A stretch of DNA of 64,000 bases from Haliotis cracherodii (taxonomy: Eukaryota). Shown here in pieces: positions 9,138 through 25,500 of the stretch. The notes under the pieces were generated by a model. The model was not told the DNA's origin, searched no databases, and saw only the letters and a program-made list of their open reading frames with translations. The position numbers and the translations under genes were made by a program. Each line of letters starts with the position of its first letter. Within the stretch, counting starts at the first letter, position 1. The stretch is from assembly GCF_022045235.1 (NCBI RefSeq), contig NW_027266308.1, forward strand, positions 33,790,001 through 33,854,000, written 5' to 3'.

Positions 9138-12100
9138 ATGGAGCGATCGAACACAATGTGTCATAAAAACTATGGTGATCTCGGAAGCGAATTCATCATT
9201 GAGCACCGGAAAATCAAAACCATGAACCTCTGGATAGCTTTAATTATTTCTGTCATATTTGCATTATGCGTTGATCTACACACAAAGGTTATTCATATTC
9301 GTTGCATTTAATTCATAGATTTAGTCTCCCTCCATTTGTCTCTGTATAAGGCTTTGCATATCTAAAACTGTTCGCCGACCAGCTGCTGACGTTTGGACAT
9401 TGCTAGCTTCATGTTTCGGAATGGTTTCCGCCCATAAGACCTGCTTCAAATTTTACCCTTAACCATAAATACATTGTAGCTTTTGGTTATATCACATCAT
9501 ATTTAATTATTACATCAAATATGTTTATGTTTTTTGGTTACATTTATTGTTTCCACAAATGTTCTCAGTGTCTTATTTCATTTATTGCAGGACATCTACC
9601 ATCTATGGTCTATTTCAGCTGTTTTGTTTGGTGTTCTAGTTTTCAAACTCTATACAAAAGTACACAGAGGTATGTACATATGTGATGTAGGTACATTTTG
9701 ACAGAATACATTACCAAAAGTGTTTAGTTGTGAAACATTTAATGCATTATTATTTATTATATCAAGCTATGGTCAGCCCAATCACAGGAATTCGAAACTG
9801 TACACAAGTAATAATTGTTGGTGCTTTCCTGTCATGATGATACTGGAATTTTCTGTTAAGAGCAGTGTAAAATTACTAAAAAGCCTAACTCACTAACTTC
9901 AAAATAGGTCTTGAAACCTTGAACTCATCAATCCAAAAGTAATGCAATAAGTTGCAAAAGGAAAGCCAGGTATAGTAAGATCCAATGTTCAGGCTACACT
10001 AAGTGTAATAGTTTATACTTATTTGCTTGTTAGTTTGTTGTTTAACGCCACACTCAGCAATATTCCAGCTATATGATATGAGTCTGGACCTGACAATCCA
10101 GTGATAGACATCATGAGCATCGATCCACGGAGTTGGGATACAATGACATGCATCAACCAAGTGAGCGAGCCTGACCACCTGATCCCGTTAGTTGCCTCTT
10201 ATGACAAGCATAGTCGCTTTTAACGTCAAGCATGGGTTTCTGAAGATGTATTCTAACCCGGATCTTCACAGGTTATATTTAATTGAAAGTCATTTAGTTT
10301 GTGTAGGTGAAAAGCATGGTAATAGAAATAATCTATCTCTTGTATTTAATTTCAGTGTGACGTTGTATAGGTCAGTCATCTTATTTTAGAAAAATAGTGT
10401 TAATCCCGATTACAGGGCAGGATGTGAAGCTGTTAACCATCTTGTATTACATGTATAAATTTTACAGACTGTGTACAGGAAGTTGATCTATTATTATTTG
10501 AAAGGTTAACAGTTACCTTTTGGATATATTTATGTAATTTTCCTTTCCTAATCCATCAAAGATAAGGTCTCCCCCCCCCCCCCTCTCTCCCACTTTGGTT
10601 GTTCCACAATTATACATCCACCTCTGTACATTTAGAGTTAATATGCTACAACTATTATTCCTGTGTTTAAGTAAGGATCAGATATATGGATGGACAACTT
10701 CTTTATTACAATTAGGAGCGACGTTTCGGTGTAGGATACCAAATATCTTATCCTTACTTAGTTCTCCAACTTGGAAATGCCTCTCAAAGAAGTGTGTTTA
10801 AGACTTTCCCTTTGGAACTTTTGGTCGTATCACAAATGAGCATTTCACCTGTTGTGAGATGGTTCATTTTCTGATTGCTGAGGACATGATAAACGTGTGT
10901 TGTTTCCAGAGGTGATCCTAATATTACCCACAGTTGGAGTACAGCTGAAGACGGAGTACATGCTGGGATTGAAGTGCACCAAGTTCATAGATCTCTCGCA
11001 CATCCGGGACATCATCATCAATGAAGCTATCACTATGGTACGTTGTCTTCAAGTTCACTTTGTCAGTTTACAGTCACATCACGATATGCAATTTGTGAAA
11101 TTTTGTTGCAAGACATGTGACGTCAGCCTAGCAACAGGGTTGCTGGGGTCATCGATGTTCATAAGCTCCTCTCAGTGATTTATCATCTCTACACGTTTGA
11201 TAGTGAAACTTGTTACTGCAGTACATAAGCACATGCTTGTTTGTTTGTTTGTTTGTTTGTTTAACTCTGCACTAAGCAATATTCCAGCTACCGGCATATG
11301 ATGGCGATCTGTAAATAATTGAGTCTGGGTCAGACAATCCAGTGACTGATATCATGAGCATCTATCCACACAATTGCGATACGATGACATGCATCAAATT
11401 AGTCAGCAAGCTTGACCACACAAGATTGGGTTGCTGAAGACCTATTCTAAACCAGATCTTCACGAGTCGTTTTGGTATTATGCACAGTATAATAGCAGCT
11501 TATTTTTATTAAAGGATTGATCTCTTCACGAGCGTGCTATTAAGTTATTTATGATGTTAATTCATTATTGTTTTTTGGTGTTACAGAATTAGATGCAAAT
11601 GAATCACCCCCAAACTAATATTTCATTTCCACACCATTTCATTTTCTTGTGTTACATAGCTGTGCTAAATCATGCAAAATCAGGAACAAAAGTTTATGAT
11701 GCTTTGTATGATTAAAAATATGCTTATTTTGAACTTAATTTTGTTTAAGATAACTATTTTAAGCATCCTTTTTAGGAAATAAACTCCAAGCCCCTGTCAA
11801 TATTTTCATTGTTTATTTTGATCCTATATTTTGTCGCATGAACTGGGAAAGTCTGTACAAAGAGATCTATTGGTTTACAGTTTTGTTCAAACTTTTAATT
11901 TTATGAGGTCCTGTTCAGCATGTTCTGACAATTAATGGATCATATTTCTATTTTGCCTTTCATCTTTCAGTGTTTAGATATAAAGAATCTGTAATTGTCT
12001 CTCTGATCAGTTTTGATGACCATGAAATAGAAATTAACTACTGCCCTTGGTCACCCTAAGCGTATTCTCCTACCTTCCCCACCCAACACGCCAGGGTCAT

Positions 12101-12243: not shown

Positions 12244-15200
12244 CGACACACCACAAACNNNNNNNNNNNNNNNNNNNNNNNNNNNNNNNNNNNNNNNNNN
12301 NNNNNNNNNNNNNNNNNNNNNNNNNNNNNNNNNNNNNNNNNNNNNNNNNNNNNNNNNNNNNNNNNNNNNNNNNNNNNNNNNNNNNNNNNNNNNNNNNNNN
12401 NNNNNNNNNNNNNNNNNNNNNNNNNNNNNNNNNNNNNNNNNNNNNNNNNNNNNNNNNNNNNNNNCTGGCCAGTTCTAAGCCCACCCATCATATTGGTGAC
12501 CCTAACTACTCCTTAGTGCATTCCATACTACTTACAATACACCTGTAGGGATTCCAGGTAAGAACATAGGTCCCCAACCTGTGCTAGTTGTAAGAGATGA
12601 ATGAATTAATGGTTAGGCTCAGTGACTTGGTGACATGGTTGATTGCCTGTCACCGTATCCTAATTGCATGGATCGTTGTCCATGTTTACTGGATTGTCTT
12701 GTCCATACTCGATTATTTACAGACCTCCTTCATATAGCTGGCATATTGCTGAGTGCGGCTTTAAACTTCCAATATTGAATTTTCTACTTGTTTGTATTTT
12801 GTTCCAGCAAAGTGTCATCAGTTATCTTGCTGTTTTACTGAAGGAAGAAAAATCCGGAAAGTTAAAAACTTTGTATCCATTATTTTCGGTAAGTTGATCA
12901 CATTCATGGGAGACACAATGACTAGACTGAATGTATCTACATAGGATTCAGCCTGGAGTACTGGCTAACTGGACCAACTGGTCTGGGGATGACGTCATGG
13001 GTTCACCCTTATGATCACCCACGTTCTATCCAGAGATACACCTCTACAAAAACTTGGGATATCCAATTAAGGGGTTGCTGGGGTAGCCCAGTCGTCAATG
13101 TGTTTGCTCATCATGCTGAAGGGCCAGGTTCAATTTCCAATATGAGTACAATGTATGACGCCCATTTCTGGTTGTTTCACAATTTTATTTGCCGAGAAAT
13201 AAGTGGTGTTGGTTCTTGCTTGCTCAACTTCCAATCATATTTCAGACTATTGCATTTTTCTGTTGGAACTTCACCATAAAAGTAAACATCTTTTTTTCCT
13301 GTTTTGCCAAGCTCTTACATGTTTAAGTGAAAATATATGACTTTGTAGGAATGGTCACCGCAAGTTCATTACTGAAAACTAAACAATCAAATTCTCCTGG
13401 TCGGATATGGTTTATTGCAATCATAAATGTTGTCAGTATTCAAGAAAAGACTTGAGTAGTATACAGAATTATGTCTTTATATCCAATATACAGTCAGTAT
13501 CTCTTTCACACTTCAACACCCTTCTTGAGATTCTACTGGCAATACAATGCATTGTTATACACACTTAATGATAGATACCTTAAATATTCAGCTTTTACAA
13601 ACATTCAATGTGCATCAACATTTCCTGGGCACTGGCTAGAAGTATTATTCAATAACTTTAAATCATCTTTCAGTATGGAAAATGTTTCCATGTTTTTCAC
13701 AACATATCTTGTATGCAGACTTTTCTCAAATATGAATCATCAAATTAATCACTTCACAATACAGTCAAGTCTGTAAATACATATGAACATGAATATCATG
13801 ATATGTTAACTATTAATGTGTAGTTTGATGTTTGTTAAAGGGGAAGTGTACACGCAAAAATCACTTTCTTTCTTTTTCTTAACAAAACGCAATTTTAGAA
13901 TTAGTTAGTATCTGTGTTTGAAAATATACACTCATTTTTTTTCACAGTGAAAGTAGGAAGCTCACAATAGTGTGAAAGTGATATGCCGTTATGAGGCCTT
14001 CGTTTTACGAGCGAAATAGGCCTGAGTTATCCCCCTTAGATTATGACGTAATTGGTGCCAATTCAACTGGGTCCCTGTCTATCCTCAACGCAAAAGATAT
14101 CAAGAACCAGTTTGCGGTAAAACAACATGGTCTACGACACACTCCGGCGCAGTGGTGACTCAGCATAACACAATTCTGGCTGGCATCTGAGATGCTAGAA
14201 TCACAAAACTGTACCTACACCACGTGAAGCGGCTCTAACAAAGCATGATGATGTCATAATGTTTATCAATTGGCACCAATGACGTCATATTGCAAGGGAC
14301 ATAAGCTATGGTGTTTTTGTTATGGAAATAGAACATTTGGTAAATGTGAAAAATATAAATCGTTTTAGTGCAAAAAATATGTTAATTAAATATGATGTTT
14401 TTATATTTTTGTCTATGACACTTCTATGTTACCGGTAACACTTTTAATGTGGAAAAAGTACAAGAAAAAAAGGTTCATTTCCGTGTGAACTTGCCCTTTA
14501 AAGTTGGTAATCTATGTGCCAGTGTGACCAGCGTCTGTAGCTCCACTTGGTCCTTGAATACAGATCTGTAGGAGGCATACTGACATGACTTGGCTGTGCT
14601 CATACAATGGCTAGACCACTTTGTAGTTGAGCTTCAGTTACTTTATAGAGAGTTGACACCACTTTGAACAGTATTTTAGTTACATCACTCCATGTCTTGT
14701 TTCATCATCATGTTGACCAGGAAGGACAGTGATGGGATGCAGGTCTTAAATGTTCACCACTAAACCAAGAATCATATTCATAATTATCATAGGTCACATT
14801 TGGGATTCAAACCCAAAACCATACTCTCTGGCCACCCCCGGGACCACCTCTGTCTGTGGTGAAGCGCAGCACCTCAGGTTACTATGCCAACCATACCACC
14901 CGTAGCCAAGGTATCTTTAATATTACACTCTTCAGTAGTAACCTTGTAACAAACCAGGGATTTACCTGGGGTATTTATTTTGGTGGTCCAGGGAACTCAC
15001 AACCTTTAATTACAGTACCAGTTAGAAAACATGGGATTCCCATTGAATTGACAAATATTGAAGATAACAATCTTATTTCAAACAAAGCAGCTTAATTCCT
15101 TGCTTGTTCTCGTCTTATTTAATATGTAAATTGTAATTTGATGTACAAGTTGAGACTCATGATTGTTTGAATCTGAAGACATACTTGAACTTTCCCTTTC

Positions 15201-18200
15201 AAAAAAACATTTACAACTCTTCTTGTTCTGCCAATGCCATGCTTTGATGCACACACTTCCCCACGATCATCAATAGGTACTCCAGTTCAAATAGAATATA
15301 AACTTGTGCAAGCTGAAAGGAAATTGATGTAAGACAAGTGGTGGCATATTATGAAATCGCAGCATAAACATGCATACAAATTTTTCTGCGTCCAAGTGGA
15401 TGCACTTTGCATTTCTTTAGCATCCATGTTTACGAGTCAAGGACCCAAGATTTTGCGTCCCGCAAACTGGACACTTCAAGATTAAGTTTGGAGAGGTGAA
15501 CAACAATAACAGATGCTAAAAGACTGGAACTAGGAAAACACCCAAAAACATTAAACTAATAAACATGGATAATTTTAAATCTGTGGATCTTATTGCATTT
15601 CATCACCACATTAAACATGTTAAAACACTTGAGCTAGAAGTTGGACGTTCTAGAAGGCACAATTTGTATAATCATTGAGTAAACCATGTCATATTTTGTA
15701 CTTAATCGCATTTCTAGATATAGAAGCCCTGCCTATGCATACTTTGTGTGCGTAATAACTTGATGCAAAATTATGTAACAAGACAATACACTTTGTAACC
15801 CTTTTACACACTTATAATCAGTTTTTGAAATTTAGCATTGCTCTAATGTTGGAAGGTAAAGATGTGTAGGGGCCCTTGATTCAAATACCATAGGAGCAAA
15901 CCTACAGGACACCCCCGCACCCCTAATTTCAAACTCTGACTATTTCATTGTTACCCTGTACAGTGTCCTTGATTGATATTATTCACGTGCTGATCTGTCC
16001 TCTTATCTGTTTGTATATTCTACCACAAAATACTCCATTCACATCCAAAGCTGTGGATAAAACATCTAATTTCTAAATAAAATGAGACAAAACAAATGCC
16101 CTTATATCACCTCTCAAGTACACCTGCATTCATAATTCAGTAAATGATTACCGAGAGCGGTTCCCTACCAAACCAATCAATATCATCTTCCCAAGGCAAG
16201 GGAGTTAACTGACCATAAAAGTCCGATATCCATCCTTTGCCTAACTAGATTGGAATTTCTGGGCTCAATCGCAGTACCACTAGTGGCTATTACGAGTTAT
16301 TTCTCTTCTATGTCCCCCCTATTGATTCCAACTCTTTTATCACTTGCATTTGCTTCAAACAAAATGGTGGTGCCCAGTCAAGACAATCTGATCAATAATC
16401 AAAATCTATATTGTGATAAAATGGGTCTTAATGCACAAAGTGCATCAAATCAGGTGAGCACTTGAGTAAAAACATGAGGAGATTCGGAAATATTTGCTGA
16501 CATCAAGTTGACGGTACACATGCTTTGCAAATTCTGCAACCAACTGAAATCTGCATGGCAGTTTACCAACCAGATGTCAATTTCGTTATGCAATGTTGAT
16601 TGGACAATGCATAGAATCGTTAGTCCAGCCAAAATAAAACTCCATAAGCCCAGCCTAGTTTGGCAAGGATGGAAACAGGACTTTTATGGTCATTTCAGTC
16701 CCTTCCCTCCGGAAAATGTTCAATATTTAAGACATCCTATAACAAATGGGAAAACTCATGTCCCTTTTCATTATGCCAAAAATTAGCATAAGATAATATT
16801 GGAGTTGTCCGTGGCTGCAACAAAATATATCCCGATTACGATCAACTTGCATGTATATATGTATCCTACTGTAAATAAACCCAAACCCAAACAATAGGCT
16901 TCTCAAACATGTCAAACAACGTGCACAAATTTAACAATCAACAACTATTGTTCAACTGAGAAAGTTCATTTCGCCGTTCATAACGAGCATAGTCCAAAAT
17001 ACTTTGCACCTGCAATATTGTAATATAGTCAATGTTTTTAGACTCCAACCACTGAAGGCCGATCTCAAATGCTTTGACTGCCTCGGCATTGGATGGAATC
17101 TTTGACTGGCTGTCCTCCTCATCCTCACTGGGCTCCTGCTCCATGGGTTCAGATGGGACTTCCTGTTCTTCATTCTCAGTAGCACCTATTGTGGAGATAT
17201 CTGTGGTTGGGAGATTCTCATTGAGGCCGGTCCATTCCTTGATGGTTGCTACGGATGTCTCAATGCCTGCTGCCTCCAGTCTCTCCTGAAACAGCTTCTC
17301 AGAATCAGCTTTGTTTCTGCCGCTGGCATCGGCAAGAGGAGTTGATTCTTCATCAGCAGGATCAGAACCACCAGCTAGGGGGTCGAACACCATGGGCAGA
17401 CACTTATGCCACATCTTTTCGATTGTTCGTGGTTTAATGGCAGACCATGCCTTCTCTCCAATATACATCATCCTCTTCAGTGAAAGGTGACGAAGAAATA
17501 GTTTCACATCAGTTTCGGTTGTCACCACCTCCTTGATTAACTCAGTCCTGTAGCTTGACTTAAAGGTGGCCATTAATCCATGGTCTAGGGGCTGAACAAC
17601 TGAGGTAGTGTCTTTTGGCAAGAAAATGACCTGGATATTCCCATCTGGAGAAACCAGAACATCACCAGATGGATGAGCAGGATTCTCATCTAAGAGCAAC
17701 ACGGCTTTCTCGTCCAATTTCTTTTCTCTCTGATAGTGCCTCACTTCAGGAATAAAACATGTTATGAACCAGTCCATGAAAATTGCAGATGTCATCCAGG
17801 CATTGTGGCTACATTTATACCAAAAAGGCAATTTTGATACATTTACATGTTGGAAGCCCCTAGGCGATCTATACTTCCCGACACAGAGAGGCTTCAGTTT
17901 GTGCTGGCCTGTTTTATTCAAACAGAACAGCATTGTCACCCGGTCTCTGATTCTCTTGCTGTTTGCACAGCTAGGTTCATCTGACGGAACAAGAAAGTTA
18001 TTGTCTGGAAGAAGTTTGTAGAAAAACCCAGTCTCATCACATGTGTACACTTGTTCATCATTGTAACCACCAGAAAGTAAAAGTTCCCTCACTTTCTGAC
18101 AGAACTGGTGAACCTTCTCGTCAGCAGCTGACACATCCTGGTTCTTAAGAACTTGATCATATGGGAAATGCAGGATTTCCTCCTTGTATCCCAGTGTTGG

Positions 18201-20978
18201 CACATTCTTTGCATCGTCTTCATCTGGATCTCTCTGCTTGCCAAGGTTATGACGTTTCTGAAATCTGTACAACCATCCAGCACTAGCTTTGAAATTATTT
18301 TCACCATTAATGTCTTTATTTAATTCATCAGCTTTGATCTTCAACATGGCTCCTGTGACATTCATTCCACGTTCCTTCTGCTGCAAGTACCAGCTATGCA
18401 GAACTGAATCAAGTAATGTATCTTTTGCTGTCCTTGCTTTCTTTTTCTTAATGTCAACATTGTATGCAAATGTACGCAGTTTGTCCTCATCTTTCATCCA
18501 ACCTCTAAGTGTAGAATCAGGAATTCCCATGTCTCTCAGAATCTTTGATCTTGGTTCACCTGCTTTTACTCTTTCAACGGTATTTAGTTTTTCTTTGATA
18601 GAGTATGCCTTCCTTTTTAGCTTACGAGGAGAAACATGTAATGGTTTGGGAACCATTGATACATTTTTCAGTACCTCTGCCAGGTCGATTTGTTCCTCTT
18701 TGCTCATTGCTGAGAGAGGGTCAGGGGTTGGCACAGCTGCAGTAGAAGATCGCGTTTTTGTTGGTGACATTTTAGCTGCTGAACGAGGGGATGTATTTTT
18801 GCGTGATGTTTTACCACCTGAAGGCCTGCCCCTTCTTCCATGTTTTGGACCAACATCTGTTAGTTCATTCAATTTTGCTTGTTTGGTAGGGGGCGGAGCC
18901 TGAACTCGGGTCTGAGGCAAAACCTGAGGCTGAGGTGTTATGGGCGGTGTATTCACTACAGCTTGAGCGAGCTGTGCATGATGGGTAGTGATGTGTCCAG
19001 TCTGACTATCTATAACTGGTGCATGTGTCACTACTGAGTATGCTGCAACAGAATGAGGAGCATGCAACATAGTGTCTTGTGCATTGATTATTTGCTGATG
19101 TCCATCTTGAATAGATATGTTTGGGACCATCTGGATCTGACTTGGAGTCCTTGCAGATATAGTAGTAGGAACAACAACATGGGTTTCTGGTTGGAGTTTA
19201 CTTGATTCCAAAGCAGCAGATATTATGTTGTTATCACTTTGCATTGTTGCTGCTAACCTATCTTGTTGAAGGGGCACAGAAGTTACTGACCGGACGGATG
19301 TCATATGAACTGTAGTAGCCATCATTGTTGATGGGTCAATCATGGTGACGTTATTAGCAGGTGCTGTGGGTGGTGGTGTGTGCCTGATTGGCTCCTCAAT
19401 TGTTTGGCGGAGCTGTCCTTCTATTGTTTGCCTTATCGGCGCTTCAAGTGTCTGTCTTATTGCTGGGGAGTCAATATTTTGACGAAGGGGTGCTTCCAGG
19501 GTGGCCCCACCATAAACTGGTGCAGATGTGTGGTAACTAGTTGGGTAGTTTCTTGGAACAACCTGGGATGCTAATGGCCTGGGTATGCCATCAGGATTTG
19601 ACACCCCCAAAGGTTGTGGAGGTGCTGCATTGCTCAGTCCCACATATGAGTTCCATGTCATGACAGGCGGTATGTTGGACGGTGCTGCCAAGCTGCTTAT
19701 CGGAGGCATGGGAGTGTTAACCCCATGTGTGTCATGACTGACACTTGCAGTATGAACTGGAGGCGGGTCGGTCGACATGTTAACTCACCAAATAATACAC
19801 AGTTTAAAATTATGAAAAAAATCAATGATTGTCTTCATAGGTAACATATATTTTCAACACATCACCCACACCTATGGAGCGATCTGTAGGGTGAAAGTTA
19901 TCTCACTTGTCAATCGATTTTCTGAATGGAAGCAATTTTATGGCGAGCGGCGACGTTACAACGAGGCTCTCGGGCAGAGGTTGATAACAGTCTCAATTTA
20001 CCGCTTCATGCATTTTTATACTTCTCACACATCGCAGTTTTGGTTGTAAACCTTCTTCCCAATTTGTTACTTCGATCCATCCATGGGAATAGTTCTTCTT
20101 AACTTCTTTTGAAGCCGGACAAATTTTGATACAGATGCGGCCCAAGAAAACTATAACGCCATTTTTGTCATGCGTAATGAGTACTTCCTGTTTTCGCGCG
20201 CCTGCTAAATTCAGGGTTACTTCCCTTAGATCACACTGTCACCTCTTATCAATGATTCCTCGGGACTACCGTGAATAACACGCCCTCACCTTGTGCAATG
20301 TTAATGTTGATGTTGTCTTCTTGAAGTAAGTCACAATACCACAGCTTTCATTTCACTGTCACCAAAGGCAGTGAAATAACAAATAAGAACAGCAAAATAT
20401 AGTTGAACACATGATGAAAAAAACACTTGACCACTACCAAACAGTGTTATCATATGCANNNNNNNNNNNNNNNNNNNNNNNNNNNNNNNNNNNNNNNNNN
20501 NNNNNNNNNNNNNNNNNNNNNNNNNNNNNNNNNNNNNNNNNNNNNNNNNNNNNNNNNNNNNNNNNNNNNNNNNNNNNNNNNNNNNNNNNNNNNNNNNNNN
20601 NNNNNNNNNNNNNNNNNNNNNCAGTACTATATCCATTTATATAGTACTATGACCACGTTAGTGACAATTTATATCTTGCTGCTATATTTTGCCTAACAAG
20701 CCCCTGTGATCATGTGAAATACGGTCTGTTTTAAATAGAAATCAAAACTCTCATCTCCGAAATAATACCGCTTATTGTATCCGTCATTTTTGTAGGCCCA
20801 CTAAGGTCTTCTAACCCCTTGTTATTACACATTTACCAGTTAAAAAACATCTTCGAGCAAAATCGCCTTAGCTGTAATGTTAGCTTCATGTTGCTTTCAG
20901 AACTCCAGGTATGGGATGGACTGTCTCACAGCAGTGTATGAGGTCTCGCAAGAAAAGCTCTTCCCAAAACGCACATGA
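9138..20978 (+). CDS. PIGH: Phosphatidylinositol N-acetylglucosaminyltransferase subunit H (GPI-GnT subunit PIG-H)
   Basis: Exons 9138-9287, 9591-9669, 10910-11037, 12808-12888, 20901-20978, GT-AG and in frame. Two hydrophobic TM segments, then KVHREVILILPTVGVQLKTEYMLG..KFIDLSHIRDIIINEAITMQSVISYLAVLLK...LYPLFS-NSRYGMDCLTAVYEVSQEKLFPKRT*. Matches the PIG-H motifs (DIVINEAI; DCL..VY...QE). The last exon is less certain (~0.75). Confidence 0.88.
12197..12241. repeat. (CA)n microsatellite next to an assembly gap
   Basis: Direct reading. Confidence 0.95.
12259..12464. other. Assembly gap (N run)
   Basis: 206 N. Confidence 1.
13839..14497. mobile_element. Kolobok-like foldback MITE
   Basis: TTAA flanks; degenerate TIRs AGGGGAAGTGTACACG / CGTGTGAACTTGCCCT; inner inverted repeat ATGACGTAATTGGTGCCAATT / AATTGGCACCAATGACGTCAT. 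Confidence 0.7.
16184..16718. mobile_element. Non-autonomous DNA transposon M1 (older copy), just downstream of the nested gene's stop codon
   Basis: Colinear with 4050-4585; degenerate TIRs; tcaatat repeated on both flanks. Confidence 0.8.
16938..19778 (-). CDS. Intronless pogo/Tigger transposase-derived protein (CENP-B/Jerky/TIGD-like), 946 aa, probably domesticated
   Basis: Single uninterrupted ORF. Domain order: ~380-aa P/T/Q/A-rich N-terminus; AT-hook-like GRRGRPS; CENP-B_N/psq HTH (KRKAYSIKEK...GIPDSTLRGW); second HTH (FKASAGWLYRFQKRH); DDE_1 domain (CDETG...LLLDENPAHP...VQPLDHG); acidic linker; TIGD-like C-terminal helix (PSNAEAVKAFEIGLQWLE). No TIRs seen around it. Confidence 0.93.
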   Translation of the reverse strand: MSTDPPPVHTASVSHDTHGVNTPMPPISSLAAPSNIPPVMTWNSYVGLSNAAPPQPLGVSNPDGIPRPLASQVVPRNYPTSYHTSAPVYGGATLEAPLRQNIDSPAIRQTLEAPIRQTIEGQLRQTIEEPIRHTPPPTAPANNVTMIDPSTMMATTVHMTSVRSVTSVPLQQDRLAATMQSDNNIISAALESSKLQPETHVVVPTTISARTPSQIQMVPNISIQDGHQQIINAQDTMLHAPHSVAAYSVVTHAPVIDSQTGHITTHHAQLAQAVVNTPPITPQPQVLPQTRVQAPPPTKQAKLNELTDVGPKHGRRGRPSGGKTSRKNTSPRSAAKMSPTKTRSSTAAVPTPDPLSAMSKEEQIDLAEVLKNVSMVPKPLHVSPRKLKRKAYSIKEKLNTVERVKAGEPRSKILRDMGIPDSTLRGWMKDEDKLRTFAYNVDIKKKKARTAKDTLLDSVLHSWYLQQKERGMNVTGAMLKIKADELNKDINGENNFKASAGWLYRFQKRHNLGKQRDPDEDDAKNVPTLGYKEEILHFPYDQVLKNQDVSAADEKVHQFCQKVRELLLSGGYNDEQVYTCDETGFFYKLLPDNNFLVPSDEPSCANSKRIRDRVTMLFCLNKTGQHKLKPLCVGKYRSPRGFQHVNVSKLPFWYKCSHNAWMTSAIFMDWFITCFIPEVRHYQREKKLDEKAVLLLDENPAHPSGDVLVSPDGNIQVIFLPKDTTSVVQPLDHGLMATFKSSYRTELIKEVVTTETDVKLFLRHLSLKRMMYIGEKAWSAIKPRTIEKMWHKCLPMVFDPLAGGSDPADEESTPLADASGRNKADSEKLFQERLEAAGIETSVATIKEWTGLNENLPTTDISTIGATENEEQEVPSEPMEQEPSEDEEDSQSKIPSNAEAVKAFEIGLQWLESKNIDYITILQVQSILDYARYERRNELSQLNNSC
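20100..20230 (-). promoter_or_regulatory. Putative core promoter of the nested Tigger-derived gene
   Basis: CpG-enriched patch ~400 bp upstream of the ATG with clustered motifs: YY1-like CGCCATTTT (20157-20165), ETS-like ACTTCCTG (20183-20190), E2F-like TTTTCGCGCG (20191-20200). Confidence 0.55.
20459..20621. other. Assembly gap (N run)
   Basis: 163 N. Confidence 1.
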
Positions 20979-22510: not shown

Positions 22511-25500
22511 TTCAGCCCAGCAGGGAATCTGGCTTTAAATAGGCCCCCAGCAACCTATCGCTCTATCCACTCTACACAAAAAGAGTTGTACATTTAGTAC
22601 AATTCATTTAGCAGTATTGCAGCAGTAATACACCGGGAGGGAGATTATTGCCAAAATGGGAATCGATTGTCTGCGGCGTGACGAGCGAACATTTGAACCA
22701 CTAGGATACTCTGTCGCACTACCTGCTCGGGCCTCCCGCCCACAATGAGGCGTATCTGCAAGAGATTACACATTCAGTATACAGTCAACGCGTAGACATA
22801 CACGTTACGGCTGCTCGCTTCATAAAATGTACAGACTAAGTTAGGGATTTGAGGTAATGACAAACAAGAAGGGTCCTCACGTATATTAAGAATACAGCTC
22901 CTGTATTCTATTTCTTTGTTGTTTAACGCCGCACTCATCAATATTCCAGCTATATGACGGCGGTCTGTAAATAATTGAGTCATGAGCATCGATCTACGCA
23001 ATTGGGATACGATGACATGCATCAAACAAGTTAGCGAGCCTGACCACCCGATCCCGTTAGTCGCCTCTTAAGACAGGCATAGTGGTTCTGTATACTGATG
23101 GTTGCGCTATGGATTTTAGTCGTTCATATGTCGTATTAGCAGGAATTTGAGCAAAAAAAAATTCAAATACATGATATGTTTTGAAACCCCCTCGTGTTTG
23201 TTCCAAGACACCACTTCACGCGTGATGAGTTACATGCCTTTACAAACGTATAATTGTTGGATCAATCGGTGTTGGGATATGATGACGTTGTATTTAGATC
23301 AACGAGCCTACATGAGTGATAACCCATACGAATGACTGTAATACTCACTAGCTAGCTTGTAAATATAACCCGCCTGCATGCGGGTGTAGTGAGAGAGTTG
23401 GGTTTTACGCCGCTCTGTATTCCAGTTATATCACGGTGTATCAGCGTCATGTGGGAGGACAGACCAAAGTGATGCAGGTCTTAGACGGCAACCACTTTGC
23501 AGAAACCCACGAGCACGGGTATCGTACTGACAAATCAAGAAACATAATCGGGAAGAACCGGGACTCGATATCACAATCACGGGTTTCTGGCGTGTCCAAG
23601 GGGCGCAACTCTGCACAGCGAAATGCGGCGCCATAGGCGACAGGTCTAGCCGTGCCCCACACGAGAATAGAGGCTACGTACCGTCAATCACATTTACCTG
23701 TTCATAGTGATATTCAGAACTCCATTACCAACGTTTAACCTCAGTTTGGGTCAGTAATCTACATATTGTGCTTTAATGGGACCCTGTCTCTATTAGGACC
23801 GCCTCCGTTGTCTAGTGGTAGAAGGGAAAGTTGGCTAGCACTATTAAATTGGTATTAGTCTGGGCTAGTACAAGCAGCCCCGCGCACGCACGCACGCACA
23901 CACACGCGCACGCACGTCGCTATATAAGTGCAATAATCTTGAACACGACGTTGAAACCCATTTCACCTCACCTCTAACTAATACCAGAGGGGTAGCTTGA
24001 AACACGTGGAAAATAAGATACAAGGACCACACTGAGAAGTTAGTTTTCCAATCATACACGAAACTATTTGTTCCACATTCGAGAAGCGTCGCCATCCACT
24101 ATGCTGAAGGTTGTCGTCTCTCAGCTTTCCTAATTCTCCAGGTTGGACAAAGTTAACAATCATCTGGTAAGTACTACAGAGCCGTGCTCCTCATGTCTGA
24201 GATTGTTAAGGAACTCTGTGTAGCAGACACACTGTTGACCACAGTGGATGGAATTCATACCACAGCACCCGAAGATGTCATAATGAATATCATAATGAAT
24301 ATTATCTACATTGAATCACAAATACTACCAAACAGAACTTGACCCGTGAAGATGCGGGTTAGAATAGGTCTTCAGCAACCCATGCTTGCCGTAAGAAGCG
24401 ATTATATCATTGTCGTATTTGAAGAGGCGACTAACGGGATCGGGTGGTCAGGCTCGCTGACTTGGTTGATGCATGTTATCGTATCTCAGTTGCGTGGATC
24501 GATGCTCATAATATCAATCACGTGATTGTCTGGTCCAGACTTGATTATTTACAGACCGCCATCATATAGCTGGAATAACGCTGAATGCGGCGTCCTAATG
24601 CGCGTGCGTGTGCATTTGCATGAATGTGTAAACGTGACGTATCACCAGGTATATTTTGAATTTCTATGTGTGATGGCAGTCGTGTAATTCAAATGCAAAT
24701 AGTGGAATGAAGGTAGTATGTAGTGTGTATGTGTTCGCTCTCATTCTTTACGCCTGTTGACGACTTTCAGAAAAGAATGTGTACTCTGTACTTCAACACC
24801 ATTATCTGGATGCAGACCCAAGTGGATTTTTTTCTATCAGGTTAATAAACAATTACTTCCAGCTTCCAACGCACCGTCCCATCGGGTTTGTTCAAACGAA
24901 CTCGAACAATCGCGAGGCAATCTCACGTTAAGGGTTAATAAAACGCACCAAGGGAAATAACTCGTGTAAGCATTATTACTGTCCTCTCCCATGAGGGCTG
25001 TCCACACTTCTCGTAATGCAATTAAATGTAATGCTGACCGAGTGATATTGAGGGCACCGACGTTGTCTGAATTTCTGATAGGCTGTCATATGCCGATATA
25101 AAGAGGTGTAAATATCACATTACTGCGCGTGGTGATATCATTATGAGGGGGCGTATCATAAGTCAGAGGTTTATTATTATTATTATTCCACTTGCGGTAC
25201 ATATACCGCTTAAACACAATGTGTAAGTTCGGAACCAATGGCGTAGGGCTAGGGTTATGTGTCGTTTTACCATTATGATGCGTTATGTCCATTTTCCCTC
25301 AAGTTCGTCATTCTTTCGAACGACCCCTGCACGCGCTAGGCCATTCGATTCGGACGAAATGGGGCGAACCTCGGCTCAAAGTCTGGAATTGTGAGCGTCA
25401 CTGCGCCTCGAACTTGAAAGTCCTTGAAGAGGGCGCTAACATATACTTATCGTATTTGACTGCTTGAAAAAATATTGAAACATGTGTAGGACAGAATAAT

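What the first reader, a model, noticed from the sequence alone, without database searches (positions are those of the whole stretch)
16938..19778. Apparently domesticated pogo/Tigger gene with an intact DD34D triad, AT-hook and long disordered N-terminus
Seen: a 946-aa intact single-exon ORF with two HTH domains and a DDE_1 domain. All three catalytic Asp are present (codons at 18036-18038, 17688-17690, 17583-17585), with 34 residues between D2 and D3. The usual D-N motif reads D-E (LLLDENPAH). An extra ~380-aa P/Q/T-rich extension carries an AT-hook-like GRRGRPS and several S-P-basic sites (TSPRS, MSPTK, VSPRK). No TIRs or TA TSD are visible. Established: pogo transposases were domesticated repeatedly (CENP-B, JRK/JRKL, TIGD1-7, fission-yeast Abp1/Cbh). 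Inference: this may be an independent invertebrate domestication, a CENP-B-like chromatin or transcription factor with a new activation/IDR module that may retain nuclease chemistry.
Basis: partly seen in the sequence, partly recalled or inferred. Interest (0 to 1): 0.78.

Follow-up and report, generated by a model that had tools for sequence, protein, structure and literature searches.

The report
Abalone gene derived from pogo transposase
A jumping-gene enzyme of the pogo/Tigger type has settled in abalone genomes as a single, immobile, conserved gene with a long new front end; this is an ordinary kind of event, and here it has no described counterpart.

Summary
Window 16938-19778 (-) is an intact 946-aa ORF with CENP-B_N, HTH_Tnp_Tc5 and DDE_1 domains. 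D581, D697 and D732 lie at the stated codons, with 34 residues between D2 and D3.

It behaves as a host gene, not a transposon:
- It is unique in the 1.18-Gb genome at protein and DNA level, whereas a resident pogo family gives at least 70 DNA matches.
- A TIR search validated on that family finds no TA-flanked inverted repeats.
- Contigs from four organism labels are collinear with it.
- The ORF contig diverges 1.0-1.4% against 3.3-4.0% in the flank.
- All 6 listed in-ORF substitutions are synonymous.
- Two other abalone proteins differ by 5 residues each.

RefSeq names the Haliotis rufescens copy "jerky protein homolog-like", but JRK arose in mammals. No protein elsewhere exceeds 51% identity, and none shares the N-terminal 380 residues.

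New here:
- The near-invariant residues beside the catalytic Asp are replaced (N579T, N698E, N723D, Q733H), so retained catalysis is doubtful.
- The gene lies antisense in the last intron of the PIG-H gene, as an earlier scan note on this same stretch said.

Limits: conservation is shown only among very close species, transcription is probable but unproven, and function is inferred.

The parts
16938..19778 (-). Intact single-exon ORF, 946 aa, pogo/Tigger-derived
18639..19778 (-). N-terminal extension, residues 1-380. It is P/T/S/A-rich with low model confidence, and has no relative in any search
19380..19499 (-). Residues 94-133: about five degenerate 8-10-aa repeats of an (I/L)RQT(I/L)E-like unit. 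A short helix is predicted at 108-123. There is no tandem repeat at the DNA level
   Evidence: read from the translation
18609..18848 (-). Basic segment, residues 311-390, holding the RGRP (AT-hook-like) core at 314-320 and the S-P-x-K sites SPTK and SPRK
   Evidence: for the residues. The motif definitions are recalled, and Pfam gave no AT_hook hit
18468..18617 (-). CENP-B_N helix-turn-helix, residues 388-437
   Evidence: 2elh, 1hlv; pLDDT above 90; 1hlv, TM 0.63 by target
18234..18413 (-). HTH_Tnp_Tc5 second DNA-binding domain, residues 456-515
17379..18131 (-). RNase-H-like DDE core, residues about 550-800 (Pfam DDE_1 at 612-790). It holds D581, D697 and D732 (DD34D) and the replaced neighbours T579, E698, D723 and H733
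17100..17216 (-). Acidic low-confidence stretch, residues about 855-893
16947..17090 (-). C-terminal pair of helices, residues 897-944. Relatives share them (their alignments run to about residue 940), and they may form a dimerisation module
   Evidence: The dimerisation role is inferred
19779..20161 (-). Unspliced upstream stretch covered by the contigs, which end at 20134-20161 in all four runs. It is a candidate 5' UTR and start region
   Evidence: The tool itself warns that contigs cannot prove a start
20157..20199 (-). Cluster of GCGCGAAA, CAGGAAGT and AAATGGCG motifs. It is promoter-like and was noticed post hoc
   Evidence: The motif meanings (E2F, ETS, YY1) are recalled
14600..16210 (-). 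Downstream stretch covered at the same contig depth as the ORF in all four runs. It is either a long 3' UTR or plain genomic coverage. The first polyA hexamer is 1.8 kb past the stop
16184..16720 (.). Old high-copy MITE, 537 bp, inserted about 220 nt 3' of the stop. It is not part of the pogo-derived gene, and contigs of all four runs break there
12889..20900 (+). GT..AG intron of the host PIG-H gene, which contains the ORF in antisense
10915..11049 (+). PIG-H exon, Pfam PF10181 positions 2-46
12808..12888 (+). PIG-H exon, PF10181 positions 42-67. The match is weak alone (E 0.11) but collinear with the exon before
20901..20978 (+). Candidate last PIG-H exon. It is in frame after the TTTCAG acceptor and ends in a stop
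   Evidence: Pfam gave no hit, so its identity rests on the frame and on a recalled resemblance

Best explanation
This is a domesticated pogo/Tigger transposase. It is a single-copy, immobile, protein-coding host gene known so far only from closely related abalones (Haliotis). It lies antisense in the last intron of the PIG-H gene.

Shown:
- Transposase ancestry.
- Loss of the transposon's ends.
- Uniqueness in the genome.
- The same genomic position in four organism labels.
- Purifying selection on the protein.

Inferred mechanism:
- The two CENP-B-type helix-turn-helix domains bind a specific DNA sequence.
- The adjoining basic RGRP / S-P-x-K segment adds minor-groove contacts in AT-rich DNA.
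- The C-terminal helices pair two molecules.
- The orphan 350-aa low-complexity front end and the acidic stretch recruit partners.
- The protein therefore acts as a chromatin or transcription factor.
- The DDE core is kept mainly as a scaffold. Its Asp triad survives, but the conserved residues next to the catalytic Asp have changed, so cutting or joining DNA is probably lost or altered.
For: Ancestry:
- Pfam finds CENP-B_N, HTH_Tnp_Tc5 and DDE_1.
- The model's fold matches Mos1, Sleeping Beauty and SETMAR cores and the CENP-B DNA-binding domain.
- DD34D lies within the Tigger range DD29-36D (PMC7386202, passage read).

Immobility:
- Of the 60 matches (48 of 1499 first-look candidates scored), the only one above 52% identity is the gene itself. 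None covers residues 1-322.
- The 3423-nt locus has 1 DNA match, itself.
- The resident pogo family has at least 70 DNA matches, a TA duplication and a 14-nt TIR.
- A scan that recovers that TIR finds no pair between the ORF and the host exon.

Same position: contigs of 4 of 4 runs, each a different organism label, are collinear from about 16607-16663 to 20134-20161, and again across 14600-16210.

Constraint:
- The ORF contig diverges 1.04, 1.06 and 1.36%, against 3.31, 3.57 and 4.02% in the flank (Fisher p 3e-7 to 5e-8).
- 6 of 6 listed in-ORF substitutions are synonymous third-position changes.
- The H. rufescens protein and a Logan protein each differ by 5 residues and one in-frame Gly. Neutral drift at the flank rate would give about 71-85 changes and about 4 stops.

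Independence:
- In 1.84 billion representatives only its own cluster is full length. The other 149 listed hits are 25-51% identical and match the transposase part only.
- On the tree it has a long solitary branch outside the resident family.

Active site: it keeps 76 of 96 highly conserved columns, while most relatives keep 0.85-1.0. The changes N579T, N698E, N723D and Q733H lie beside the catalytic Asp.
Against: - Conservation is shown only over about 1-4% DNA divergence. No ortholog from a more distant abalone or gastropod was found, so long-term maintenance is unproven.
- I could not obtain orthologous DNA. dN/dS is therefore an estimate (about 0.06-0.15 under assumed ORF difference counts), not a measurement.
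- 148 of the 188 differences that read laying found were not listed. At least two non-synonymous changes known from the proteins (L303S, I364M) are among the unlisted ones.
- The runs are only guessed to be RNA, and an intronless gene gives no splice joint, so transcription is not shown.
- TIRs decay with age, and a 159-nt N run (20462-20620) could not be read.
- DNA binding, dimerisation and loss of catalysis are all inferred.
- An intact DDD triad is still compatible with activity.
Confidence: 0.75

Rival explanations
1. It is a domesticated gene that is still an enzyme. The DDD triad works, with a remodelled second shell, and the protein cuts or rearranges DNA for the host, for example at relic transposon ends.
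For: - All three Asp are kept with the family's spacing.
- The DDE core is modelled with pLDDT 86-98.
- JRK, JRKL and POGZ also keep the triad (PMC7386202, passage read).
- The whole core, not only the DNA-binding part, has few changes between species: 2 of the 8 distinct substituted sites lie in residues 381-946.
Against: - Four residues that 29 to 34 of 35-36 relatives share beside the catalytic Asp are replaced.
- No cognate TIR-bearing elements exist for it in this genome.
- Conservation of the core is also expected if it is a structural scaffold.
Confidence: 0.15
2. It is not domesticated. It is the last intact copy of an otherwise extinct or newly arrived pogo element, open by chance or youth.
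For: - The Asp triad and all transposase domains are intact.
- Conservation is shown only among very close species.
- Low ORF divergence could in principle reflect recent arrival.
Against: - The flanks are the same in four organism labels, so the insertion predates their split.
- Substitutions are biased to synonymous sites: 6 of 6 listed.
- 5 amino-acid changes are seen where about 71-85 are expected at the flank rate, and only 1-3% of simulations had no stop.
- There is no TIR or TA duplication.
- A 380-aa extension absent from every transposase relative stays open.
- The terminal branch is long.
Confidence: 0.07
3. It is the mollusc ortholog of vertebrate JRK/JRKL or a TIGD gene, as its RefSeq name 'jerky protein homolog-like' suggests.
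For: - The automatic name.
- The nearest Atlas clusters are named Jerky or Tigger-derived.
- It has the same domain order and DD34D, as JRKL does (PMC7386202).
Against: - JRK and JRKL arose in mammals, and the oldest TIGD genes within vertebrates (PMC7386202, passages read).
- The best identities are 37-47% to transposase-length proteins from an elephant shark, a reedfish, a bee and unnamed samples.
- No starred clade holds the query.
- I had no human JRK or TIGD sequences to put in the tree.
Confidence: 0.02

Closest known systems
JRK / JRKL / TIGD2-7 (mammalian and vertebrate Tigger- and pogoR-derived genes)
   Same: - CENP-B_N + HTH_Tnp_Tc5 + DDE_1 architecture.
- Single immobile gene under purifying selection.
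- JRKL is also DD34D/N, and the published Ka/Ks values are 0.05-0.2 (PMC7386202).
   Different: - An independent origin in a mollusc lineage.
- 946 aa against about 510-670 aa.
- An orphan 380-aa N-terminal extension.
- Replaced neighbours of the catalytic Asp.
POGZ and POGK (Passer-derived genes with added N-terminal modules)
   Same: A pogo transposase core fused to a long, new N-terminal part that gives host function.
   Different: - POGZ and POGK carry zinc fingers or a KRAB box and lack CENP-B_N (PMC7386202).
- Here the added part has no recognisable domain, only an RGRP core and low-complexity sequence.
CENP-B, fission-yeast Abp1/Cbh1/Cbh2 and Drosophila CAG
   Same: - A pogo-derived double HTH. 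The model matches the CENP-B DNA-binding domain (1hlv).
- An acidic stretch, and C-terminal helices that could pair.
   Different: - The triad is not recognisable in CENP-B (PMC7386202), whereas here it is kept.
- No evidence ties the abalone protein to centromeres or satellites.
Pogo-derived 'CENPB' transcription factors catalogued in Aplysia, Octopus, Nautilus and Crassostrea (PMC10027918)
   Same: Lineage-specific pogo-derived genes in molluscs with no one-to-one homolog in neighbouring taxa.
   Different: - Haliotis does not occur in that paper's main text. Its supplements were not readable.
- The passages I read classify by domain and phylogeny and mention no test of copy number, TIRs or constraint for each gene.
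Resident abalone pogo transposon (family of L002, C12:47.04 Mb)
   Same: The same superfamily and domain order, with 38-43% identity.
   Different: - That family is a real transposon of about 2.9 kb, with a TA duplication, a CAGTG(A/G)TCCCTCGA TIR, at least 70 DNA matches and near-identical copies.
- The query has none of these features.

Membership tests
Domesticated transposase (six Feschotte-Pritham criteria as listed in PMC4231638, section 4, read) | 1. No transposon hallmarks (TIRs, target-site duplication) | tested here: met
   One search used criteria that recover the control TIR in L002. No TA-flanked pair lies between the ORF and the host exon. The one bracketing pair (15214/22575) is at the level shuffles give and encloses a PIG-H exon. 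The N run 20462-20620 could not be read.
Domesticated transposase (six Feschotte-Pritham criteria) | 2. Sequence and domain similarity to a transposase | tested here: met
Domesticated transposase (six Feschotte-Pritham criteria) | 3. Intact coding capacity under functional constraint | tested here: met
   The ORF is intact in three protein sequences. The ORF contig diverges at about 0.3 times the flank rate (p <= 3e-7), 6 of 6 listed substitutions are synonymous, and 5 amino-acid changes are seen against about 71-85 expected. The species are close and dN/dS was estimated, not measured.
Domesticated transposase (six Feschotte-Pritham criteria) | 4. Kept at the orthologous position in other species | tested here: met
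   contigs of 4 of 4 organism labels are collinear into both flanks. This holds only within a clade about 1-4% diverged. Deeper species could not be tested.
Domesticated transposase (six Feschotte-Pritham criteria) | 5. Expressed | tested here: inconclusive
   Fourteen transcriptome-sized runs (80-123 Mb of contigs, against about 1 Gb for X15-X18) hold the ORF. In the four runs laid, contigs end at 20134-20161 in all four, with no coverage at 20284-20450 in 3 of the 4, including the run nearest the window. But the runs are only guessed to be RNA, and contigs cannot prove transcript ends.
Domesticated transposase (six Feschotte-Pritham criteria) | 6. Mutant phenotype or host function | not testable with these tools
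   No paper links this gene to abalone.
pogo superfamily, Tigger family | CENP-B_N/HTH_Tnp_Tc5 DNA-binding part, DDE_1 core and a DDxD triad with spacing 29-36 | tested here: met
   spacing range from PMC7386202. Placement in Tigger rather than pogoR was not tested with reference sequences.
Active pogo transposon | Multiple copies, TIRs with a TA duplication, insertion polymorphism | tested here: not met
   Contrast with the resident family.
Ortholog of JRK, JRKL or TIGD | Nests in that gene's clade and shares its phyletic range | tested here: not met
   Those genes arose within vertebrates or mammals (PMC7386202). Identity to anything else is at most 51%, and the branch is solitary.
CENP-B-like centromere protein | Binds a centromeric satellite motif and localises to centromeres | not testable with these tools
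   Only the fold of the DNA-binding domain is shared.

The most novel reading that the evidence does not exclude
An abalone-specific pogo-derived protein that still uses its Asp triad, with a rebuilt second shell (T579, E698, D723, H733), as a host-controlled nuclease or recombinase. An orphan disordered module and an AT-hook-like minor-groove reader would direct it to AT-rich repeats. That would make it a mollusc counterpart of CENP-B/Abp1 that has kept its chemistry and arose by capture of new coding sequence inside a host intron.
Probability: 0.1. Interest if true: 0.65.

Novelty: new member of a known kind. Interest (0 to 1): 0.35.

Why it matters
Repeated domestication of pogo transposases is well documented in vertebrates, insects and yeasts, and has been catalogued by domain in some molluscs. 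This locus adds a case checked against the standard criteria in a vetigastropod.

Three features could be useful:
- A large orphan N-terminal extension, which bears on how a transposase acquires a host-function module.
- A kept Asp triad with replaced neighbours, a natural test of which residues matter for pogo catalysis.
- Nesting antisense in a housekeeping gene's intron, which may explain how it acquired expression.

It also shows that the RefSeq name 'jerky protein homolog-like' should not be read as orthology.

Tried and rejected
- Word-indexed protein searches with the whole protein, residues 381-946 and residues 1-380 returned only the gene's own cluster, plus one elephant-shark protein. 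They gave no deeper ortholog.
- The Atlas search of the N-terminal part gave no usable hit.
- A search of the genome with the N-terminal 380 aa gave only chance-level hits (E above 0.3).
- The metagenome scan had 34 pattern matches, none a relative.
- The first inverted-repeat scan (seed 10) was underpowered. The same settings missed the true TIR of the control element, so I replaced it with a custom scan.
- The pair 15214-15227 / 22575-22588 was considered as relic TIRs and rejected. It encloses a PIG-H exon, and shuffled flanks give a similar count.
- The resident family's TIR motif is absent from the window.
- There is no DNA tandem repeat under the peptide repeats.
- The promoter-like motif cluster was defined after I had seen the sequence, so its 0 of 100 shuffles is not a test. 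The single motifs are near chance.
- The careful tree search did not finish, so only the quick tree is reported.
  - For alignment A2 I picked 35 of the 150 listed hits by hand from the top 65, leaving out short fragments and the 988-aa bee protein P0016, and added P0002.
  - For the tree I added 6 of 29 own-genome loci, those with the longest open frames.
- Supplementary tables of PMC7386202 and PMC10027918 may list mollusc or abalone sequences.
- I did not try to name the window's species. The cluster look-up shows only that its protein is in NCBI next to H. rufescens.
Full report
**Observation**

A stop lies two codons upstream of the ATG (open frame 948 aa).

Pfam finds three domains:
- CENP-B_N at residues 388-437.
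- HTH_Tnp_Tc5 at 456-515.
- DDE_1 at 612-790 (E 2.9e-43).

By sequence, the DNA-binding part matches the solved CENP-B domain 1hlv and the fly protein 2elh.

In an alignment with 36 relatives these columns are D in 29 of 36, 34 of 36 and 31 of 36. The residue after the second Asp is N in 29 of 35 relatives and E here.

The RGRP core (residues 314-320) and the S-P-basic sites are present. Pfam gave no AT_hook hit at E <= 1.

The first 380 residues are rich in P, T, S and A, with Q only 6.8%.

**Structure**

An AlphaFold2 model built on the 37-row alignment has mean pLDDT 63:

| Residues | pLDDT (means of 10-residue blocks) | Part |
|---|---|---|
| 1-350 | 30-46, 52 in one block | N-terminal extension |
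| 385-512 | above 90 in most blocks, with dips to 64-86 | the two HTH domains |
| 550-800 | 86-98, with a loop near 594-606 at about 50 | DDE core |
| 855-887 | low | acidic stretch |
| 897-944 | 81-92 | two long C-terminal helices |

No homologs inform the N-terminal part, so its low confidence is only weak evidence of disorder.

Foldseek matches the model to Mos1 (4u7b, E 2.7e-5), the CENP-B DNA-binding domain (1hlv, TM 0.63 by target), Metnase/SETMAR and Sleeping Beauty.

**Gene or transposon?**

The genome is 1.18 Gb in 80 contigs.
- A six-frame search with the protein gave 60 matches at E <= 1e-5, with 48 of 1499 first-look candidates scored. The gene itself is at 100% and the rest are at 26-52% identity. 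None reaches into residues 1-322.
- At the DNA level the 3423 bases from 16738 to 20160 match only themselves.
- As a control, a resident pogo element (locus L002, with an open frame of 557 aa) gave at least 70 DNA matches at 69-100% identity. These include matches to its ends only.

That element's ends are shared by several copies. They show a TA duplication and the inverted repeat CAGTG(A/G)TCCCTCGA.

My first inverted-repeat scans, with a seed of 10, missed that repeat. I therefore wrote a scan that recovers it and applied it to the flanks of the query.
- With 14 nt and one mismatch there are 0 pairs.
- With two mismatches there is one pair, 15214-15227 with 22575-22588. Shuffled flanks give a mean of 0.2.
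- That pair encloses an exon of the host gene, so it cannot mark the ends of an element that landed in the intron.
- The resident TIR motif is absent from the window.
- The 159-base N run at 20462-20620 was left unread.

**Host context**

An earlier scan note (s1-826450) said the gene lies antisense in the last intron of PIGH. I tested this.
- The Pfam PIG-H model matches window 10915-11049 on the plus strand (positions 2-46, E 5.6e-13).
- It continues collinearly in the next exon (positions 42-67, E 0.11 alone).
- That exon ends at a GTAAGT donor at 12889.
- A TTTCAG acceptor ends at 20900, and the frame runs on for 25 codons to a stop at 20978.
- The last exon gave no Pfam hit. Calling it PIG-H rests on the frame and on a resemblance I recall.

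On this reading the ORF, its upstream stretch and an old MITE all lie inside an intron of about 8 kb.

**Other species**

The protein's 90% cluster has three members:
- the window's own protein, which is in NCBI;
- XP_046371801.1, 'jerky protein homolog-like' of Haliotis rufescens (947 aa);
- a Logan protein on a 3825-base contig.

Each of the other two differs from the window's protein by 5 substitutions and one extra Gly. Six of the eight distinct substituted sites lie in residues 1-380.

Eighteen public runs from 7 studies and four organism labels hold most of the ORF's words. I laid one run per label on 14600-20450.
- In all four runs, contigs are collinear with the window from 16607-16663 to 20134-20161, with no joint inside the ORF.
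- They are collinear again across 14600-16210.
- They break at the MITE at 16184-16720.

The same flanks in four labels mean the same insertion site.

**Constraint**

| Run | ORF-bearing contig | Flank 14911-16211 | Fisher p |
|---|---|---|---|
| X3 | 1.04% | 3.31% | 3e-7 |
| X8 | 1.06% | 3.57% | 5.1e-8 |
| X9 | 1.36% | 4.02% | 6.6e-8 |

(All, using the counts.)

- The flank also carries 8-19 gap letters against 3-4 in the ORF contig.
- All 6 in-ORF substitutions that the tool listed are synonymous third-position changes, which has probability 1.3e-4 under neutrality.
- Against this, 148 of the 188 differences were not listed. The two non-synonymous changes shared by both other proteins (L303S, I364M) are among them.
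- Simulated drift at the flank rate gives 71-85 amino-acid changes and about 4 stops. Five changes are observed.
- With 15-30 assumed ORF differences, omega would be 0.06-0.15.

**Expression**

The 14 runs that hold the ORF and are flagged 'RNA?' have 80-123 Mb of contigs. The four genome-sized runs have about 1 Gb.

Coverage stops at 20134-20161 in all four runs laid. In 3 of the 4 there is nothing at 20284-20450, including X1, which is closest to the window. That is hard to explain for genomic reads.

Just upstream of the contig ends lies a cluster of GCGCGAAA, CAGGAAGT and AAATGGCG. I recall these as E2F-, ETS- and YY1-like motifs, but I defined the pattern after seeing the sequence.

No polyA hexamer occurs within 1.8 kb of the stop. 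The downstream 14600-16210 has the same contig depth as the ORF in each run, which fits a long 3' UTR. It fits plain DNA coverage equally well.

The tool states that contigs cannot show a start, an end or a strand. Transcription is therefore probable but not shown.

**Relatives**

HMMER against 1.84 billion representatives gave 12605 hits at E <= 0.001.
- Of the 150 listed, only the gene's own cluster is full length.
- The other 149 match only residues from about 374 onward, at 25-51% identity. The 51% hit is a 187-aa fragment.
- Most are 450-570 aa long.

The named ones among ten looked up are from an elephant shark, a reedfish and a bee. The nearest Atlas clusters are called Jerky or Tigger-derived.

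On a quick maximum-likelihood tree of 43 rows:
- the query has an end branch of 1.2 against a median of 0.75;
- it falls in no starred clade;
- it lies outside the resident abalone clade, which has support 100 and near-identical members.

The careful search did not finish.

Passages read in PMC7386202 say that Tigger elements are DD29-36D, that JRKL is DD34D/N, that JRK and JRKL arose in mammals, and that Ka/Ks of the vertebrate genes is 0.05-0.2. The RefSeq name therefore reflects similarity, not orthology.

**Active site**

Across the 96 columns that are at least 80% conserved among relatives, the abalone protein keeps the consensus at 76. Most relatives keep 0.85-1.0, and the lowest keeps 0.70.

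Four of its 20 departures sit beside the catalytic residues:

| Change | Position | Relatives with the consensus residue |
|---|---|---|
| N579T | two before D1 | 34 of 36 |
| N698E | after D2 | 29 of 35 |
| N723D | nine before D3 | 33 of 36 |
| Q733H | after D3 | 33 of 36 |

The triad is intact, but its conserved surroundings are not. I read this as relaxed or altered constraint on catalysis.

**Mechanism, mostly inferred**

- The two HTH domains bind a specific DNA sequence, as in CENP-B.
- The adjoining basic RGRP and S-P-x-K segment adds minor-groove contacts.
- The C-terminal helices, which relatives share, may pair two molecules.
- The orphan N-terminal part and the acidic stretch may recruit partners.
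- The DDE core serves as a scaffold.

The N-terminal part has no relative in the Atlas, in 5.8 billion proteins or elsewhere in this genome. It evolves faster than the rest.

**What is known**

Applying the six Feschotte-Pritham criteria, as set out in PMC4231638 (section 4 read):
- Criteria 1 to 4 are met, though criteria 3 and 4 only at shallow depth.
- Criterion 5 is inconclusive.
- Criterion 6 is untestable here.

Pogo-derived 'CENPB' factors have been catalogued in Aplysia, Octopus, Nautilus and Crassostrea (PMC10027918, passages read). 'Haliotis' does not occur in that paper's main text.

My literature searches found nothing on this gene:
- 'Haliotis' + 'transposase' + 'domesticated': 5 papers, none on this by title or abstract start.
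- 'jerky protein homolog' + 'abalone': 0 papers.
- 'jerky protein homolog' + 'Haliotis': 0 papers.

Supplements were closed and may hold more.

**Verdict**

This is a sound but ordinary finding: a new, lineage-restricted member of the well-known class of domesticated pogo transposases. It is already annotated under a misleading automatic name. Its orphan N-terminal module, its remodelled active-site surroundings and its antisense nesting in the PIG-H gene are its points of interest.

Noticed in passing
L002:751-3653 (G000 C12, about 47.037-47.040 Mb): A resident pogo transposon of about 2.9 kb with an open frame of 557 aa, a TA duplication and the TIR CAGTG(A/G)TCCCTCGA. It has at least 70 DNA matches, including pieces that match only its ends, and near-identical copies (L017, L002). 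It looks like a young and possibly still mobile family.
   Followed up: partly
window 16184-16720: A 537-bp MITE with inverted arms of about 54-70 nt, 8291 first-look candidates in the genome, and copies about 81-82% identical. It lies about 220 nt 3' of the ORF's stop and is present in all four organism labels.
   Followed up: partly
window 10915-11049, 12808-12888, 20901-20978 (+): Exons of the PIG-H (GPI-GlcNAc transferase subunit) gene. Its last intron (12889-20900) hosts the pogo-derived gene in antisense.
   Followed up: yes
window 20157-20199 (-): A tight cluster of GCGCGAAA, CAGGAAGT and AAATGGCG just upstream of where all contigs end. It may be a TATA-less promoter about 700 nt from the last PIG-H exon.
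   Followed up: partly
G000 C15:2908004-2908573 (-), C78:35332445-35333995 (+), C1:85007219-85007932 (-): Other pogo-like matches inside long open frames (1176, 686 and 715 aa) with no stops. They may be further domesticated or fused pogo genes. An earlier scan note (s1-847789) reports a zinc-finger exon spliced onto a dead pogo transposase elsewhere in this genome.
   Followed up: no
window 14600-14795: Contig depth 131-277 against about 11-20 in the neighbouring bins, in all four runs. This points to another repeat or an abundant RNA at the edge of the laid stretch.
   Followed up: no
window 19380-19499 (-), residues 94-133: About five degenerate peptide repeats of an (I/L)RQT(I/L)E-like unit, with a predicted short helix and no DNA-level tandem repeat. 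The weak hits at C34:71556716 and C34:71557196 (E about 0.3-0.45) are not significant.
   Followed up: partly
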